NCBI GenBank assembly: GCA_976226885.1
Contig: OZ320315.1
Coordinates: 47,988,001-48,052,000 of the forward strand
Origin: Iphione sp. A-MEVVRFRX5
Taxonomy: Eukaryota
Direction: 5' to 3'
DNA length: 64,000 nt
The translations under genes were made by a program, and so were the position numbers. Positions 2,796 through 57,700 of the stretch are shown in pieces. The notes under the pieces are model-generated. The model was given only the letters and a program-made list of their open reading frames with translations, was not told the DNA's origin and made no database searches. Position 1 is the first letter of the stretch, and the number at the start of each line of letters is the position of its first letter.

Positions 2796-5700
2796 CCTCC
2801 TGTACAAAGCTAACTATAAATCGCCTGACATGAACCAGAGGTCCTTACGGACAGCAATGTCCACTTCCTATTGCCGGGGTTGACGTCGCACCGTCAACCA
2901 ATTCTTCAGGTCTGTCTCTTTTGTGTTTTCACCGTAGTCTTTGAAGTGTATAGAACACGATCGGGGACGGTAAGGTTATGACAGCCTGAAGTGAGGACAT
3001 TTATAAGCGGTAGCAAACCTGTCTGAATTCACGGTTTTCTCTCGACAAGACCAGCTCCCAGTTTTCAGAACGTTTGGCCGAGCATTCCGGTAATACTAGA
3101 CATCAATGCCAAGCACTGCACGTTAGAGGGTTCTGCACCAAGGAGGGCGACGTACAACGATCGTTCTCAACCAGTAGTGTTTCTTTTTTTTGTATTTAAA
3201 GAAACACATACAAGTACAAGTCTCCTGCTCGATACCGTACACTTGATGATATAAAAAAAACGGTGAATATATGTTGCCTGAAGTCGGTTTTCTAGTTGGG
3301 TGGGTGCACCGTCTGGGAGCTAATGGTGCTGAAAAGAGCATGCGACAGTTCTCCTCGCCGCAAGTAGACGTCAAAGGACGACACCTGTCTCTTGAACAAT
3401 GGTGCTCAGTCTCTATTGTTATTCTTAGAGTGCGCGCAAATAACTCATACTCCATGACCTCGTGCACGATGGTATATGCTGTCTCGTCAGTATATTTCAA
3501 CTGTACCATGTATTAATCAAGTGAAACATTGACGTTTTTTTTTCATTTTATAGAAATGCAGCTCGACATGTTGAGGATACCTGTAGATTTAAGTGATATC
3601 CTGTGGTTTCAAGTCACTCCGTGCCTCTGGGACGATGACATTGAATATGATATACTTTCCATTGTTTTTTGGTTAAACTGGATTCATCCTGGCTTTCAAT
3701 GTGTGTACTCTCTGACCTGGGTGCTAAATATAGCTCAATAACAAGGATGAGCGATAAGTCAGGTAAGAGGGGGAGCCATTGCAGGCGACTTCTAATCAAT
3801 TTCAAGGCTCGGTTCCACGTAGAAAAGGTCAGTTAAATTAAATATAACAGGCAGACGAGTTTTCGGCGCCCTTGCCTCAGCGCCTTTGGTCTTTCATCTG
3901 GGTGTTTCCCAGCTTCCCTCTAGTGCCGGTATCTATAAATAATCACCTCAGATGTCAAGGTTAGATCGGAAGCTATAAACCCGAGCAAGGCGAGCTATAT
4001 CTGTAATTTTGAATAGAAACAGACAAGAATGGTTATGGTTTCGTTGGTCACGTTCTGCTATTGATATTCATAGTAACAAAATTATTCCGATTGTGATGAG
4101 AATATTTATTAGGATACCAATTTGGCGAAAGAACCAATGTATTAAAGAGTAACGCAAAACCCAGTGCGTCTATTTCATCATGAGGAATAGCGATCGAATA
4201 AAATGTAGGTCCATAAAGAGATCAATTTTCAGAAAAAATACCTTTCGTTCAATAGATACCTTCCCTTTTTATACAAAAGCTTCTAAATACCAAGTGATCC
4301 AGACCAACCAATCATTTACCAGGATAAACAGTTCTATCGATATCGATATCTAACAGTGCTCTTTTCTAAAAGCATATTACAAAATACCAAAACAGATGGA
4401 GACCGGGCCACTTGTCTGTCTGGCACGTCTGTACCGGAAAATGAAGCAGTAAATAAGGCCTAATAGATGGGTGAAAATTATATCTTGGCAAGGCAGAGCG
4501 TAGCTCTCGCTTATTTCCTCCACCAATATACAGAAACATTATAAACAAATTGGTGACTGGAATGTTATTCAGATTTGCATTATATACTTTGTATCGTCCC
4601 CAGTTAAGTCTACTAAAGCGTGTTGCTGGTACTATAGGAGTGAGTGCAAGCCTTTCCGACGCGCGTGGTATGACAGTGAAAACAAAGACCTGTTCTACTG
4701 TGACAGCAAAGCCCAAGATGGTGCGCCGAGCCGGTGTGCTCTGTGGGAAGATTGGAGGTGCTCAAGGAGCATAACTTACGACCTGGGGCAATAGAGTTCA
4801 GAGCAGGTGGCCCACATAGTGGGTGCCGCTCACGTGTGCAATAAGGATCCCCCAACCTCAACGCTATGAGTAGATCAGACGGGGATAAAATGAAGGACTC
4901 TATTTTAGGTTTTTCCTACCATGCTGTACCTCATGGTCTTGCCATTTGCCTTAATCCCCTCATCCAACACTTCCAAGGTTGAGATGTACCCGTCCATATG
5001 GCTAGCCACAGTCCCCCATCCCTTAGTATGGTTATTTCTGTTTGAAGTCGCAAAAACGGTATTGCTCGCGGTTATGACTTTTAAATGTGCAAGCCTGGCG
5101 TTTCCTCGAACTAGATCTAAGCACTGGAGTCGATTCAGCATTCTGACTGTAGTCGGAGGGCAATCACCGCTTTAAACTGGTTATTAGATCATTAGCATAC
5201 CGCTTCTAATGCGGCATTATAAACAAGACAGAGCCTGACGTCAAAAGTAAGGCAATTTAATGTTAGCTGTTGTAGTAGTGCCATCCAAAAGAAATTATTC
5301 TTAGATTGACCTTTATTCCCCAGAGGCTAATCTAAGCACGTTTTCGTTAAGGGGGGCAGTTGGCGACATGTCCCGAAATATCTGTTGGCAGTTTTTTAAT
5401 TTGTCGCCAACCTATTGATACGAGCCTAATTCACGACATCCTCTATTGTCTAGCAACAGCCGGCCATGAATGCCGGTGTTCACATGCGTTTTAACTGAAG
5501 TCGAATTGGCCATTCGCAGCCTTCCCGATGTTCTCTGTTGCTCTGATTAAATAAGAGAAAAACTCGTAGATTACGACAGAAAAGAAACCGCCGATAACAA
5601 TTTATCATCTTTGAATTGGTTTTCACTTAAAAACGAAATGACATGTAATCATTTAGACATTTGTAGTTAAACAGCTCGAAGGGACCCCATACGCTTCGGA

Positions 5701-51700: not shown

Positions 51701-54700
51701 CTGGACATGTCCACAATATTGTCGAAGGTAGTGGACATGTAATTCCAAATGTACAATGCTATAGTTGGTGAAGATAATAATTTTATCGTATCTATTCCAT
51801 AACAGTGTGGTTTCAACAATATTATTATTCAAAGAGAGGACCCTAACATAACTGCTGCATTGGTAAGCTTTATCACAGTGGTGGATATCTGAAAGCAATT
51901 GAGATTTTTGATATACGCTGGTACCGTTGAAATATGTACATGCACACAAATGCCGCCCAGATCCGTATACCCAAACGAAAGTAATTTATTTCATAAAGAT
52001 AAAAGTCACTAATATTCTTGGTATTGTTTGCTTCACCGAAGAGGACATGTTACATGGTATCCAAGGTAACCATATCTGGCACTGTATGTAGACTAGCAAG
52101 TTAATGCCCATGCAAATTTACACAAATCTCTAGAGTGTACCGTTCTCACCTTTATAGCTGCCGAAGTTATAAACGGAGTGACCTGGTCTGAGGCCCTCGA
52201 TGAACATTTCCGACAGAACTACGACGATGATGAAACACTTACGTGGCAGTATTTTGGCAGCGCTTCGGGCTTTTTCCGAAACTTCCCAGGTAGGCCTTCT
52301 GGTACCAACAATACTATTGTCTGGCCAGTTTTAATTGAACCACAGTAGTTCTATGTAAAATGTGGTGTTCGAATACTTTTTCTGAAATAATTAGATATTT
52401 TTGTTCATTCTTATAAACCTATATATCTAGTTGATTGTAATCATGTGTACTAAACGTTAAGAAAATATCATGTGTCTAAATGTTCGGTTGATGAATGGTT
52501 CCATATATGGAACGATTTCTAATAGCTATTTGAAAACATGCAATTTAAGATAAAGTGAACTCTTTTGTTTTAAACATAGCCGTTATTAATATTTGTTAAG
52601 CTTACAAGAATGGATGATATTTTTTGTTCTAATTACGTTGATAAAAATAAGGGAACGCTAATGTTTCGTGCAGTGCTATAAATGTACAAATCACATGTGG
52701 ATTGACAATCTTGTCAAATATGCAGTTCACACTAAGTTTTGTTCACATATCATGTAATGATTTTTGACCCACAGAAGCAGTGCCAGTAATGGGTCCTCTT
52801 ATTTGACATTATGTCTGTATGATTTAGTTTTTAAAAATCAACTAAATGCTCAGTTTCTTAACGAATTCCACGAAGGAGTGAAATTCCATTCGACGTTATA
52901 CCTCTAGTTAAAAGCTCGAAGCAGTGGTTACGATAACATGATGTGCGAACTCCGATCGTATATATTTCTTTGCTGCTGTTTTGGCTTTGACAATCGTTTA
53001 TTTCTCGGAGTTGTAATATAAATGCTTGAAAATCGTGTGTTTCTTATCAGTGTCTAAATCATTTGCCAGCCACTTTAAAGTGGATTTCAATGTTTACGTA
53101 TTTCTGGTACGCATGTTCGCTTGACGTCTTCGACAATCTAAACGGAGTGGTGATGGTGCCAGCACTCTCTTTTAAGTGTCAGCGATTTGTGTCACGTTTT
53201 CTATGCCTGAGACTTGCTGTCCTTTGTGTTCAGGCATTCAATGGCCAGGTTCTGGGGTAGATATGTATGACTGTAGAACGCGCGGCTGGTAAGTTATGAG
53301 CAACTAGCTCGTTGAATTCGGGTGATAAGTCGCGCGATTTTATTTACTCCATCGAAAGTCTTTTCATGAGATGTCCCCATTAATAGCCAAAGACAAAATT
53401 CCAGTGGCAAAAAAACTGCCAGTTTGAAATTGCGCAACCTTATGACCCGATATCAAAAAGAGCGTTGCATTGAGAATAGATCCATATCTCCTGGCCCACA
53501 CAATCCACGCACAACACAGTCGTTGAAAGGCTTTACAAATGTTTTTCACCTTCGCCCCACGCTTTTTTGCACACTTCACTTTTTCCCCTTCACCCAGGCA
53601 GTTGAGTTTCTCCACAATGCGTCAACATACCATATTAATATGAATGCGTAGAAACAATACCTTTGTCCTGTTTTACCTATAACCTACCCAGATGTTCCAG
53701 GGTGTCTCTCTGCAACAACAATGCCATTAGGGAGGAAAGACATCATTTTGGAAAAAAACGAGACATTTATCATAAATCTCCAGTCACAAGGAAGCAAAGG
53801 CGGCGTAATACTCTTAAGCTCGTATTTAAAAAGGAAGGAATACGATTAAATTGAATTGGGCTCATATTTTGTGGAACACATCTTTCAGAACATACCATCA
53901 GCGTCATTGCAATGTTAATTCCTTATCCGCCCGCCAGGTCTTTGCGACAAGACTCCTGTAATCGAATGGACTGTCTTTTTCCTACAGCATTTGGTCTCGG
54001 TTCGGCATTTATATCGATAGCTTACTGTGGTGTAGCGTTAACTGATGCGGTTACCTGTTGAAATCGAGAGTAATGCGTCTGAAAGCTTAAAACGAAACGG
54101 TAAATGTCACTAGCATAAAAAAATAAATGCTTGCCAGGAATCTAACGGTCACAAATCCCTAGTCCTTGCAGAATTCTGGAAACAAAACCTTTGGGCTAAA
54201 AAGTTGTCCTCGATTTTAAAATCATCGACGACTGTAATGTACGCAACTGAGACACACTCTGGACATCATATTTTAGGTTCTTCCCAGACATGATGTTTTT
54301 CCTCTTTAAGGTGAATGGAGATTCGATTATTACCAACAGATAACGATGACTAATAAACTATTGATGGAAGCCTGACCAATCAAGTGTCGAGCAACAGGGG
54401 TAACATGTGGTAGATATACATGTCCGTTTGTTGTTGTTGTTGCTGCCCCCCCGGGCTGTCCCCCTTTCTTCTTCTCACAACTTTTCTTGTTAACAACATC
54501 CGCTGAGCAGACAGAATTGTTGCCCGCAGAAAGCTGAGATTAATGGGAGACCCCGACGCCTCGGGTCTCATATTATCATATCAAAACCCTTGAATAGTCA
54601 CTTACAAATGACAGGTTTAGTTGTGACTCGGCCCTCTTACGGACGCCGATAACTCGGCCACAAATGACGTATTTCGTAGAAGTACCACGCGGCATCAATC

Positions 54701-57700
54701 CAGCACCCGACTCGCCATCTGGTGAGGAGACGGTGCTTGTGGCGGAATATGTCACCTCTTACAACCGGTCGAAACCGTTTAGTCTAGGACGGCCCTGCCA
54801 TGTGTATAGGCGGAGGTCACCAGGGATTACATCCTCGGATTATCTCTTGGTCACTTCTAATAAAGCTTTTATGACTGGGTATGATCCAGGAACGTGCTAT
54901 GCCTGAGGAGACTTCCTCGTGTTGCTGGCCTCATAATGTTCGTTCTTTCATCGACACAAATATATATTTCGAGGTAGCAGCACATCAAAATACAAGAGAA
55001 ATTTCTTGTATCACTGCCAAGTATTTTCGTAATTTTTCTTTTTGCTTGTTTTTCGTCATATACCTCAGGCCCATAATTTGTTTCCGGTAGTTCTTGAAAC
55101 ATTTTATTTCATTCTTGTTTTGTATATATCTTCAGAACAAATAATAGAGACATATACAATACACCATTTTGTTGCTTACATCATTAGCTTTCATTTGATA
55201 TACATTTCATAATAATATGAGCAGCAGAACCTATGTTACTATATATCTTTGGGGCTTTGAGTCTTAATTAGCATTGAAAAAAGGAAAAAGAAAAATGAAT
55301 CTGCCTACTGGCCGACTCTCTATTTTTTCAGCATGTTACCAGAAACACACTACTTTTTTATGCCTTACGTATTTTATCAAAACAACGACTTTCACTTGGC
55401 CTATTCAAAATATCTGTGTTTTCGATAACCTGACCTACCCTATTTTCTGGGCTATCGCAACATTTTCTATATTATTGTTTTGCAAATATCTTATCCATGA
55501 GTAAGGCTCATACAATACATTTTGTTCCTTACATCATTAGCTTTCATACGATTCAATTTCAATACAATCCAAGCAGTACTGATATAAGTTATGTACTATC
55601 TAGCTTTTTCAATGGAACATTTGTGTAGTGAAAAAAAAATATCAACCTACCTAATGACCTATTTTCAGCAAGTTTACGGAAACACACATTTTTTAGGTTT
55701 TACTAAGTAGTTAAATGTTAACACTCTATTGTATCAGCGCCATTTGGAACCTCTTAACAATTCAATCCGTAAGATTTCAATATCCCATAAAAGGAAATTG
55801 AGAGTAACTTGACTCTTCAAGAGTTCACTTCTCTGTGTGTCAGCAACTTCCCACGAGTCTTGCTATATGTAGCTCTTCTGAAACGAGCTGGAATAAAGAA
55901 TTTCTATTCTGTAGGTAACCTGCCCTTTGGTTTTGTCGCAATATTATCCCATTTCAGACTATAGCGTATTGTCGATGATTCAAAGGGCATGGTTCCTTTT
56001 GTTTATTTGATAATAACACTGGACACAACACCGCCATGGCTTCCATTTCGCCATACCAAAAGGGCATAATCCTACTCCCATGTCACTGTAGCCCCAGTCC
56101 GGATACACAGCTTTTGGAGTCGCATTTATGCATCGGTATCTCTGGTGATCGAATCTCCAGAACTCCACACTGCTCTCTGGTGTTAGGGACCCGAATGTCA
56201 ATGCAACACGCCACCTGGTGGAAGGCCCTAGTGGCATGGCCATCTAACGCCTGTGTTATTCCCTTCCTTTCCCACCCTCCTCTCCTAGGGACAAACTGGC
56301 GAACTGAAAATTATGAGAAACAAAAGATTGACATGTATGACTGTAGAACAAGGGGCTGGTAAGGATATCTTTTCCCATTTTGTTTCGTGCATACATTCCT
56401 ACAATAGGTGATTTCTCGAGCAACGCACTTTTATCCGTACTTTATATATTGCACATTACACAGTGGTAGAGGTTAAGAAGCATGGACTCTTACCCTTTGA
56501 ATAGATACCTTACCTTCGAATAACGCGTTCTATTTATGCCTTGTATTCATTCTCACTAAGACTTTGATTATAACTTGACGGACGCCAACGACAGTGCTAC
56601 CTGTAGATAAAAGTACGCTATTTGATTATAAATGATTCAAAACTAGTTCGCATAAAACAGAACATTTCGCCAAGTTGAAATAGAATGTATACTGTCACAA
56701 GACAATGCTGTTCTTTGCATAATTGTACAAGCCCATCATCACATGCTTCACAGGTACATTCAGGCTGCGACATCTCCAAAGGACATTGTGATACTTATTG
56801 ACGCCAGTGGAAGTATGACAGGTCTCAGGATGGAAATTGCTAAAGCAACAGTTGAGAAGATATTAGATACTTTGAGTGATGACGACTTTTTCAACATAAT
56901 CAAGGTAATCTCCTATTCTGCTTACAAGTACACATTTTACTCTGCATACCGTGTGTAATAAGGTGGAAATGGAAATATTTGTTATTAAGCTATGTTTATG
57001 TAAGCTATATACGCATAGGCTGTCCGCGTAACTTTAAAATACGTGTATTTTCTGTTTTATCCTTAAGAAGACAGTATTCTCTATGGAAATTCAATGTTTG
57101 TTTTCAGTTTTCCAATGTACCAAGCTATGTAGATGACTGTTTCAATGGAACTTTGGTTCAAGCAAATGCCGACAACAAGAAGGTGCGTTTATTTTCTTTG
57201 ACAGCAGTCTTCTCAAAGCTAACTCTGGATGTTTTGGAAATACATCAAAGAAGAGCTGTTCCTTTCACACCAAGACCTTAAATATCTAGGCACAAGATCA
57301 AAAGATTGTCTACCTTAATGCATGACGCTGATGCGTTCGTTTCCTTTGTATGTACACGCTATACAAAACATTATACGTGAGAGGTCTATGAAATGTCCTT
57401 CGAATCTCAGTTATTAACCATTAGTTAACTTTCAGCGTTTGAAAGAAGCCATACGACATATGTCAACGAAGGAAATCGCTCAGTTTGACGATGCACTCAT
57501 TCAAGCCTTTGACCTACTAGGAGAAGTAAGTCTACGAATTCATATCTAATTACCTGAACTGGCATGCCACAATTGGATCTCACGCGATTTTCGGAGCATG
57601 ATCAAATACATAAACTGTTTTATACCTTCAAAATTATAAATCAACTTCGAAGTGAGAACAAATGTATCATGCCATGTACAACTGAGTGAAATAAGGTAAA

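What the first reader, a model, noticed from the sequence alone, without database searches (positions are those of the whole stretch)
53234..56358. Mutually exclusive exon pair A (55 nt vs 70 nt) enforced by reading frame
Both exons are phase 1 to phase 2 with canonical sites. They share ATGTATGACTGTAGAAC (17 nt) and GGCTG|GTAAG, but their 5' halves differ (GIQWPGSGV vs [14 protein letters not shown]). Including both (125 nt) or neither shifts the frame, so only one-of-two gives protein. They are 3000 nt apart, too far for steric exclusion, so NMD or long-range RNA pairing would have to select. Neither carries a stop or a damaged splice site.
Basis: partly seen in the sequence, partly recalled or inferred. 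Interest (0 to 1): 0.85.

Follow-up and report, generated by a model that had tools for sequence, protein, structure and literature searches.

The report
Either-or exons in calcium-channel alpha2delta
An annelid-like worm's calcium-channel helper gene (alpha2delta) has two old, intact versions of one short exon, only one of which fits per mRNA; both keep the ligand-contact residues but give a different loop beside the amino-acid (gabapentin-type) pocket, and the same swap is annotated in a lamp shell and an acorn worm.

Summary
Exons A1 (53234-53288, 55 nt) and A2 (56289-56358, 70 nt) lie 3000 nt apart in one intron of an alpha2delta-3-like gene. They sit between the last VWA_N exon and the first VWA exon. 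Both have AG|G acceptors and GTAAG donors and the same phase. Including both, or neither, gives an early stop.

The pair is old and under selection. Two related metagenomic contigs and the Capitella teleta genome carry the same two exon types in the same order, although their introns no longer align. One of the contigs has three copies. All copies have lengths of 1 mod 3. pN/pS is 0.2-0.4 while synonymous sites are saturated.

Spliced mRNAs of other annelids carry either the A1 type or the A2 type. RefSeq isoforms of Lingula anatina and Ptychodera flava swap the homologous tandem exons one for the other.

Both versions keep the W and YxxxxRxW residues that bind the ligand carboxylate in alpha2delta-1. 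They differ in the length of the beta2-alpha3 loop (5 vs 10 residues).

No sequencing run was listed for this species, so its own usage is inferred. I found no support for docking/selector RNA pairing. Reading frame plus NMD is the likeliest safeguard. I found no paper describing this. It is a new member of a known kind. The scan has reported other either-or exon pairs in this genome.

The parts
52157..52289 (+). Upstream constitutive exon, encoding the end of the VWA_N domain (...[18 protein letters not shown], then the first base of a Gly codon). Its donor is CAG|GTAGGC.
   Evidence: Pfam VWA_N E=9e-19. tblastn of annelid orthologues covers 52157-52291. Sequence read. The 5' end of the exon was not determined precisely.
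53234..53288 (+). Alternative exon A1, 55 nt, phase 1 to 2. It encodes (G)[17 protein letters not shown](W), the short-loop version.
   Evidence: Orthologous 55-nt exons are present in L006, L009 and Capitella. A1-type sequence is present in the Capitella, Ridgeia and Paralvinella gene models and in mRNA-derived P0251.
53289..56288 (+). 3000-nt U2-type intron between the two alternative exons (GTAAGT...CCTAG).
   Evidence: It holds no further intact or decayed copy of the exon. It has no conserved block shared with relatives.
56289..56358 (+). Alternative exon A2, 70 nt, phase 1 to 2. It encodes (G)[22 protein letters not shown](W), the long-loop version.
   Evidence: Orthologous exons of 70, 85 and 73 nt are present in L006, L009 and Capitella. 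A2-type sequence (GT.WRT..Y) is present in mRNA-derived P0261, which tblastn maps to 56264-56359.
56754..56904 (+). Downstream constitutive exon, encoding the start of the VWA domain ((W)[23 protein letters not shown]..., with the DxSxS MIDAS motif).
   Evidence: It is 96% identical in protein to related contigs.

Best explanation
A1 and A2 are a tandem-duplicated pair of mutually exclusive coding exons in an alpha2delta-3-like auxiliary subunit gene of voltage-gated calcium channels, in an annelid-like genome. Each mRNA takes one of the two.

Both versions encode the conserved residues of the first dCache1 amino-acid pocket: the Trp equivalent to W225, and the carboxylate signature Y-x4-R-x-W equivalent to Y238, R243 and W245 of alpha2delta-1. 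They differ in the metazoan-specific beta2-alpha3 loop between these residues. That loop has 5 residues (PGSGV) in A1 and 10 ([10 protein letters not shown]) in A2.

The gene therefore makes two proteins with the same pocket core and a different loop beside it. I infer that this tunes ligand access or affinity, or a neighbouring surface.

Mutual exclusivity at the protein level is guaranteed by the reading frame. Both lengths are 1 mod 3, so double inclusion or double skipping creates an early stop. I infer that such transcripts are removed by nonsense-mediated decay. Which exon is chosen is presumably set by trans-acting splicing regulators.

Shown: the anatomy, the frame logic, conservation and purifying selection, and one-or-the-other use in relatives. 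Inferred: use of both exons in this species, the role of NMD, and the functional effect of the loop.
For: Anatomy and frame. Gene identity: VWA_N plus VWA, and the nearest named proteins are annelid alpha2delta (Capitella, Dimorphilus, Ridgeia).

Conservation:
- L006 has a 55-nt and a 70-nt exon.
- L009 has 55-, 55- and 85-nt exons.
- Capitella has a 55-nt exon (annotated) and a 73-nt exon (unannotated).
- All lie in the same order between the same flanking exons, and all have AG/GT sites.
- The window aligns with L006 and L009 only in exons (67-77% nucleotide identity in the constitutive exons), with no intron match.

Selection: pN/pS is 0.22-0.43 for A1 and 0.38 for A2, with pS saturated at 0.8-1.0 in neighbouring exons.

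Type-specific conservation: the variable half of W_A1 scores 0.56-0.67 against the 55-nt A1-type exons of the other annelid genomes and gene models, and 0.41 against the 20-residue form in mRNA P0251, but 0.05 against W_A2. The variable half of W_A2 scores 0.36-0.55 against the A2 exons that carry the WRT motif, and 0.23 against the Capitella second exon.

Use in mRNA: P0261 is 1172 aa on a 4.7-kb Logan contig and carries the A2 type. P0251 is 1216 aa on a 4.2-kb contig and carries the A1 type.

One-or-the-other use: Lingula RefSeq isoforms X1 and X2, and Ptychodera RefSeq isoforms X1 and X2, differ only by swapping the homologous tandem exons.

Pocket mapping: alignment to alpha2delta-1 chains, and the residue list and YxxxxRxW signature in bioRxiv 10.1101/2022.12.05.519047.

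NMD precedent: in C. elegans, 14 of 19 mutually exclusive clusters whose lengths are not 3n depend on NMD (PMC4165533).
Against: There is no RNA evidence from this species. No sequencing run was listed for either query, so junction reads could not be counted. One exon could be used rarely or only in a few cells.

Ridgeia, a compact-genome relative (L008) and the paralogue in this genome have a single exon, so the pair is dispensable in some lineages.

The functional effect of the loop rests on homology to alpha2delta-1 structures, not on a model or an assay of this protein.

Whether the brachiopod and hemichordate pairs share one origin with the annelid pair is unresolved.
Confidence: 0.8

Rival explanations
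1. One of the two exons is constitutive. The other is an unused relic of an exon duplication (a pseudo-exon) that merely still looks intact.
For: No transcript data exist for this species. The Capitella gene model annotates only the first exon. Ridgeia has only one copy.
Against: Introns between these genomes are diverged beyond alignment and synonymous sites are saturated. Even so, both exons keep their open frame, their length class, both splice sites and type-specific residues in four genomes. Both types occur in spliced mRNAs of relatives.
Confidence: 0.04
2. The second exon works mainly as a regulatory 'poison' element. Its inclusion together with the other exon shifts the frame and sends the mRNA to NMD, which sets alpha2delta dosage rather than making a second protein.
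For: Double inclusion gives a stop 5 codons into A2. Unproductive splicing coupled to NMD is a common regulatory device (established knowledge; NMD-dependent mutually exclusive clusters are reported in PMC4165533).
Against: A poison exon needs no conserved protein sequence. Here both exons keep W and YxxxxRxW, and pN/pS is well below 1. Each exon type is found alone in full-length open reading frames of relatives and in RefSeq isoforms.
Confidence: 0.06
3. The choice between A1 and A2 is enforced by competing long-range RNA base pairing: a docking site pairs with one of two selector sequences, as in Dscam exon 6, 14-3-3xi or ATE1. On this reading the frame and NMD only act as a backstop. This concerns the mechanism and is compatible with the best explanation.
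For: The exons arose by tandem duplication, which can create selector pairs (PMC6071210). In the related contig L006, one 24-nt site before the downstream exon (4173-4196) pairs with sites downstream of both exons better than in 25 of 25 shuffles.
Against: In the window, neither tested architecture exceeds the shuffles (4 of 25 and 20 of 25 shuffles reach the observed value). The inverted repeats are short and imperfect, and region-level duplex energies have |z| below 2.5. L009, Lingula and Ptychodera give 1/20, 10/20 and 1/20. No intronic sequence is conserved between the window and its relatives, so covariation cannot be tested.
Confidence: 0.12

Closest known systems
RefSeq isoforms of alpha2delta-3(-like) in Lingula anatina (X1 XP_013401126.1 vs X2 XP_013401127.1) and Ptychodera flava (X1 XP_070573320.1 vs X2 XP_070573321.1)
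   Same: These involve the same exon, between the VWA_N and VWA exons, duplicated in tandem. The lengths are 1 mod 3 (55 and 61 nt; 61 and 64 nt), and the isoforms differ by swapping one copy for the other. The W and the D.[YF]DCR.R.W core are kept and the loop varies.
   Different: These are other phyla, and the loop sequences are not recognisably the annelid A1 and A2 types, so common origin versus repeated duplication is open. They are database predictions. I found no paper that describes them.
Homologous mutually exclusive exon clusters with lengths not divisible by three, policed by NMD (C. elegans survey, PMC4165533)
   Same: These are tandem homologous exons whose downstream frame is preserved only by single inclusion, so multiple inclusion or skipping gives premature stops. 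The intervening intron is too long for steric block and there are no U12 introns.
   Different: NMD dependence was measured there with smg-2 mutants. Here it is only inferred. The alpha2delta gene unc-36 is not named in that paper's text.
Mutually exclusive exons of the pore subunit (CaV2 exon 37a/37b; Drosophila cacophony pairs)
   Same: Isoform switching of a calcium-channel complex component by paired exons (PMC8205089; PMC11828482 and PMC12370356).
   Different: Those lie in the alpha1 subunit. This pair is in the extracellular auxiliary alpha2delta subunit, for which the alternative splicing I know of in vertebrates is of cassette type (from my own knowledge, not checked here).
Docking-site/selector RNA structure systems (Dscam1, 14-3-3xi, ATE1; PMC6071210, PMC7797038)
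   Same: A cluster of tandem-duplicated alternative exons from which exactly one must be chosen.
   Different: No competing complementary intronic elements were detected above chance in the window.
Gabapentin/L-leucine pocket of vertebrate alpha2delta-1 dCache1 (bioRxiv 10.1101/2022.12.05.519047)
   Same: The exon encodes the equivalents of W225, Y238, R243 and W245, with the YxxxxRxW signature intact in both versions.
   Different: The upstream exon has Tyr at the V209 position, as in the gabapentin-insensitive alpha2delta-3 and -4. The alpha2delta-1 chains in the PDB show a single 24-residue form of this segment. I did not check whether vertebrates splice it alternatively.

Membership tests
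Tandem-duplicated mutually exclusive exon (MXE) cluster | Two or more homologous exons adjacent in one intron of the same gene, on the same strand | tested here: met
   A1 and A2 share 26 of their last 30 nt and the peptide [10 protein letters not shown]. They lie 3000 nt apart between the same flanking exons.
Tandem-duplicated mutually exclusive exon (MXE) cluster | Same phase, canonical splice sites, and a frame kept only by including exactly one | tested here: met
   The lengths are 55 and 70 nt, both 1 mod 3. The sites are AG|G and G|GTAAG. Including both or neither gives early stops.
Tandem-duplicated mutually exclusive exon (MXE) cluster | Both copies maintained by selection across species | tested here: met
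   Both types are present in L006, L009 and Capitella, with unalignable introns. pN/pS is 0.2-0.4 with saturated pS, and the variable halves cluster by type.
Tandem-duplicated mutually exclusive exon (MXE) cluster | Mature mRNAs contain one or the other exon, never both or neither | not testable with these tools
   No run was listed for this species, so read laying could not be used. In relatives, mRNA-derived P0261 carries the A2 type and P0251 the A1 type. Lingula and Ptychodera RefSeq isoforms swap the homologous exons.
Steric-hindrance MXE pair | The intron between the exons is too short to be spliced (roughly under 60 nt from donor to branch point) | tested here: not met
   The intron is 3000 nt.
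U2/U12 spliceosome-incompatibility MXE pair | One flanking intron is of U12 type (donor /RTATCCTT) | tested here: not met
   The donors are GTAGGC, GTAAGT and GTAAGG. All acceptors are AG preceded by pyrimidine tracts.
Docking-site/selector (competing RNA structure) MXE cluster | One intronic docking site complementary to a selector next to each alternative exon, conserved across species | tested here: inconclusive
   Nothing exceeds the shuffles in the window. There is one marginal candidate, in L006 only. No alignable introns exist for a covariation test.
Alpha2delta auxiliary subunit of voltage-gated calcium channels | VWA_N followed by a VWA domain with a MIDAS motif (DxSxS), then dCache_1 and VGCC_alpha2 | tested here: met
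   VWA_N scores E=9e-19, and the start of VWA carries DASGS. Further exons in the window match annelid alpha2delta proteins that carry all four Pfam domains. The part beyond the window was not examined.

The most novel reading that the evidence does not exclude
This exon position is an ancient or repeatedly re-invented hotspot in bilaterian alpha2delta genes (annelids, a brachiopod, a hemichordate). On this reading the loop beside the amino-acid-binding pocket is exchanged by either-or splicing. Together with the second duplicated pair on the other side of the VWA domain (pair B, which carries the Y-x-D side of the same pocket), one gene would then make up to four pocket variants with different ligand sensitivity. 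That would make endogenous-ligand control of calcium-channel trafficking or gating tunable by cell type.
Probability: 0.25. Interest if true: 0.7.

Novelty: new member of a known kind. Interest (0 to 1): 0.45.

Why it matters
Alpha2delta subunits control the trafficking and function of calcium channels at synapses. Their dCache1 pocket is the target of gabapentinoid drugs and binds L-leucine.

This pair shows that invertebrates keep two splice-selectable versions of the loop that frames that pocket, over very long evolutionary times and in at least three phyla. It points to a regulated property of the pocket region that has not, to my knowledge, been studied. It also offers natural sequence variants for testing what the metazoan-specific beta2-alpha3 loop does.

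As a splicing phenomenon it is an ordinary, frame-policed mutually exclusive pair.

Tried and rejected
RNA evidence. The look-up of sequencing runs on 52100-57000 (kind rna) and on 56289-56904 (kind any) listed no run.

Fragment search. A search with the spliced 117-aa A2 isoform found no spliced fragment from this species or a near relative. It returned only genomic open frames and distant orthologues.

Further copies. A motif scan and tblastn with six exon peptides found no third intact or decayed copy in the window or in L006. They found no second copy in Ridgeia or in the paralogue at C4:46.17 Mb.

RNA pairing. The inverted-repeat list, region-level duplex energies and a docking-window test of two architectures gave nothing above shuffles in the window. 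A first whole-intron version of the test timed out.

Conserved intronic elements. The window shares none with L006 or L009. A 258-nt block is conserved between L006 and L009 only. It has no Rfam match and no copy in this genome.

Regulator motif. GCATG (Rbfox) shows no consistent position near the exons across six species.

Nucleotide-level constraint on the shared 3' half was rejected. Synonymous positions vary across species, so the 17-nt identity reflects conserved amino acids and shared codon choice.

Literature. Searches for alpha2delta, CACNA2D or straightjacket together with mutually exclusive exons found only alpha1-subunit cases.

Look-ups that failed. Genomic loci for Owenia P0100, Lingula X2 and Ptychodera X2 were not on record. 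The longest isoforms worked instead.
Full report
WHAT IS THERE

The window (G000:C4:47988001-48052000, in a genome of 1.18 Gb) carries a + strand gene. Its exons match alpha2delta auxiliary subunits of voltage-gated calcium channels. The exon ending at 52289 is the end of Pfam VWA_N (E=9e-19), and the exon starting at 56754 is the start of the VWA domain. Further exons from about 24.6 kb to at least 61.4 kb match annelid orthologues. The nearest named proteins are from Capitella teleta, Dimorphilus gyrociliatus and Ridgeia piscesae. The genome is therefore most likely an annelid, which agrees with earlier notes on other parts of this genome.

Two short exons lie between the two constitutive exons. 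A1 is 53234-53288 (55 nt). A2 is 56289-56358 (70 nt). Both have a pyrimidine tract, an AG|G acceptor and a G|GTAAG donor. Both start in phase 1 and end in phase 2.

- With A1 the protein reads ...[34 protein letters not shown]....
- With A2 it reads ...[39 protein letters not shown]....
- With both exons the frame shifts and stops five codons into A2.
- With neither exon it stops 13 codons into the VWA exon.

The shared 17-mer occurs only at these two places in the window, and the sequences flanking the two exons do not align with each other. No other copy exists in any frame of the window.

IS IT MORE THAN A RELIC?

A search with the VWA exon gave genomic open frames from related organisms, and I fetched their contigs.

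- L006 is a metagenomic contig, 96% identical in protein over the VWA exon. It has a 55-nt exon ([19 protein letters not shown]) and a 70-nt exon (GTSWRTKTFLQDKVDIYDCRVRGW), in the same order between the same flanking exons.
- L009 is a 47.7-kb contig of which 20.3 kb were fetched. It has three such exons, of 55, 55 and 85 nt.
- The Capitella teleta genome has the annotated 55-nt exon plus an unannotated 73-nt exon with good splice sites 195 nt downstream of it.

Every copy has a length of 1 mod 3 and canonical sites.

The window aligns with L006 and L009 only in exons. Nucleotide identity is 67-77% in the constitutive exons, and there is no intron match at all. Synonymous differences in the neighbouring exons are saturated, with pS 0.8-1.0. 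An unconstrained stretch of 55 to 70 nt would not be recognisable at that distance.

pN/pS is 0.22-0.43 for A1 and 0.38 for A2. Given the saturation of pS, these are over-estimates of the true ratio.

The variable 5' halves are conserved by type. W_A1 scores 0.56-0.67 against the 55-nt A1-type exons of the other annelid genomes and gene models, 0.41 against the 20-residue form in mRNA P0251, and 0.05 against W_A2. W_A2 scores 0.36-0.55 against the A2 exons that share the motif G-T-x-W-R-T-x-x-[YFW], and 0.23 against the Capitella second exon. The duplication therefore predates the split of these lineages, and each copy has been kept as coding sequence.

IS IT USED ONE-OR-THE-OTHER?

No sequencing run was listed for this species, so I could not count junction reads. 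The evidence comes from relatives.

Two full-length open reading frames sit on short Logan contigs and so derive from spliced mRNA. P0261 (1172 aa on a 4.7-kb contig) carries an A2-type exon, which tblastn maps to 56264-56359. P0251 (1216 aa on a 4.2-kb contig) carries an A1-type exon, as do the Capitella, Ridgeia and Paralvinella gene models.

More directly, the six RefSeq isoforms of Lingula anatina alpha2delta-3 include X1 with GYKWPPPPLGVDLFDCRTREW and X2 with GMKWQYRGIDMFDCRTRGW at exactly this position. The Ptychodera flava isoforms X1 and X2 carry GIKWSPDEKKALDLYDCRNRGW and GVEWETDQNGLDLYDCRNQGW. In both genomes the two versions are tandem exons between the VWA_N and VWA exons, of 55 and 61 nt in Lingula and 61 and 64 nt in Ptychodera.

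Either-or use of this exon is therefore already modelled in public annotation for a brachiopod and a hemichordate. Full-text searches found no paper describing it. All hits concerned alpha1-subunit exons, and the C. elegans survey text does not name the alpha2delta gene unc-36.

WHAT IT ENCODES

The region aligns to the alpha2delta-1 chains of the solved CaV complexes (E about 6e-41). In rabbit numbering:

- the Trp of GIQW / GTNW is W225;
- the Tyr of DMYDC is Y238;
- the second Arg of CRTRGW is R243, the classical gabapentin arginine;
- the final Trp is W245.

The gabapentin-complex paper lists exactly these residues among those lining the pocket. It names YxxxxRxW as the carboxylate-recognition signature of amino-acid-binding dCache domains. 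It places W225 in a long beta2-alpha3 loop that bacterial dCache domains lack.

Both A1 and A2 keep the Trp and YDCRTRGW. They differ in the stretch between them, which is 5 residues (PGSGV) in A1 and 10 charged residues ([10 protein letters not shown]) in A2.

The exon choice therefore leaves the ligand-contact residues in place and changes the loop next to them. I infer, but have not shown, that this alters access to or affinity of the pocket, or a nearby interaction surface. The upstream exon has Tyr at the V209 position, as in the gabapentin-insensitive alpha2delta-3 and -4, so the natural ligand need not resemble gabapentin.

HOW EXCLUSIVITY IS ENFORCED

Steric hindrance is excluded by the 3000-nt intron. 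U2/U12 incompatibility is excluded by the donors GTAGGC, GTAAGT and GTAAGG.

For competing RNA structures I looked in three ways: at inverted repeats, at duplex energies between exon-proximal intron segments, and for a single 24-nt docking window pairing next to both exons in two architectures. In the window nothing exceeded the shuffled controls (4 of 25 and 20 of 25 shuffles reached the observed value). One candidate in L006 (4173-4196 with sites 111 nt after A1 and 28 nt after A2; 0 of 25 shuffles) was not matched in L009, Lingula or Ptychodera. Among eight tests it is weak. Introns cannot be aligned between the window and its relatives, so covariation is untestable.

The one safeguard that the sequence itself shows is the frame. 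All copies in all species are 1 mod 3, so any product other than single inclusion has an early stop. In C. elegans, 14 of 19 clusters with lengths not divisible by three are measurably policed by NMD (PMC4165533). I take frame plus NMD as the likeliest backstop, with the choice itself made by unknown trans-acting factors. GCATG motifs show no conserved placement.

DISTRIBUTION AND LIMITS

Ridgeia, a relative with very short introns (L008), and the paralogous alpha2delta gene 1.8 Mb upstream in this genome each have a single exon at this position. The Lingula and Ptychodera loops do not resemble the annelid types. Whether there was one ancient duplication or several independent ones remains open.

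VERDICT

[quoted passage not shown] It is a new member of a well-known kind of splicing arrangement. It is of moderate interest because of where it sits in the protein and because it recurs across phyla.

Noticed in passing
Both copies match the same residues of annelid orthologues (for example P0261 425-454). The first reads ...WTSVYSDAA... and the second ...WTQVYMSAD.... These appear to correspond to the Y452-x-D454 side of the same pocket; that placement is my inference and I did not align it.
   Followed up: partly
L009:7679-7733: A related contig has a third 55-nt copy of the exon (GHQWDTEKVDTYDCRARPW) between the A1-type and A2-type exons. It has an open frame and a GTAAG donor but a weaker acceptor. 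The cluster size therefore varies among relatives. No trace of this copy is present in the window or in L006.
   Followed up: partly
L006:2760-3015 and L009:8066-8317: A 258-nt non-coding block in the intron before the A2-type exon is 79% identical between the two related contigs, with perfectly conserved runs of 30-40 nt, while the rest of their introns does not align. It has stops in all frames, no Rfam match, and no copy in the window or its genome. It could be a regulatory element or a shared repeat.
   Followed up: partly
L012:3537-3609 (Capitella teleta KB304010.1): An apparently unannotated 73-nt second copy of the exon (GFLWNYTEGMKRNHIDIYDCRGRGW) lies 195 nt after the annotated 55-nt exon. 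Its acceptor is TTTATTTCCTTTAG and its donor is GTATGT.
   Followed up: yes
G000:C4:46168182-46168233 (L005:8182-8233) and C4:46170219-46170365: A paralogous alpha2delta gene lies 1.8 Mb upstream on the same chromosome. It is 57% identical over the VWA exon and has a single 52-nt exon at this position (GIAWPLPNDDFDCRSQRW), with Gln in place of the R243-equivalent arginine.
   Followed up: partly
L006:4173-4196 with L006:2244-2269 and L006:3614-3635: A candidate docking site before the VWA exon of a related contig pairs with sites downstream of both alternative exons (-20.5 and -23.6 kcal/mol; 0 of 25 shuffles reached this). It was not reproduced in the window or in three other species.
   Followed up: partly
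proteins P0189/P0190 and P0154-P0175 (unnamed Logan/JGI/ENA fragments of alpha2delta): Fragments with nearly identical flanks carry loops of 19 to 24 residues at this position. One example is AKIWESKTVDVYDCRKRSW against ALQWQDNDNSENADTYDCRKRSW. The same exon may therefore be alternative, or may evolve very fast, in further lineages.
   Followed up: no
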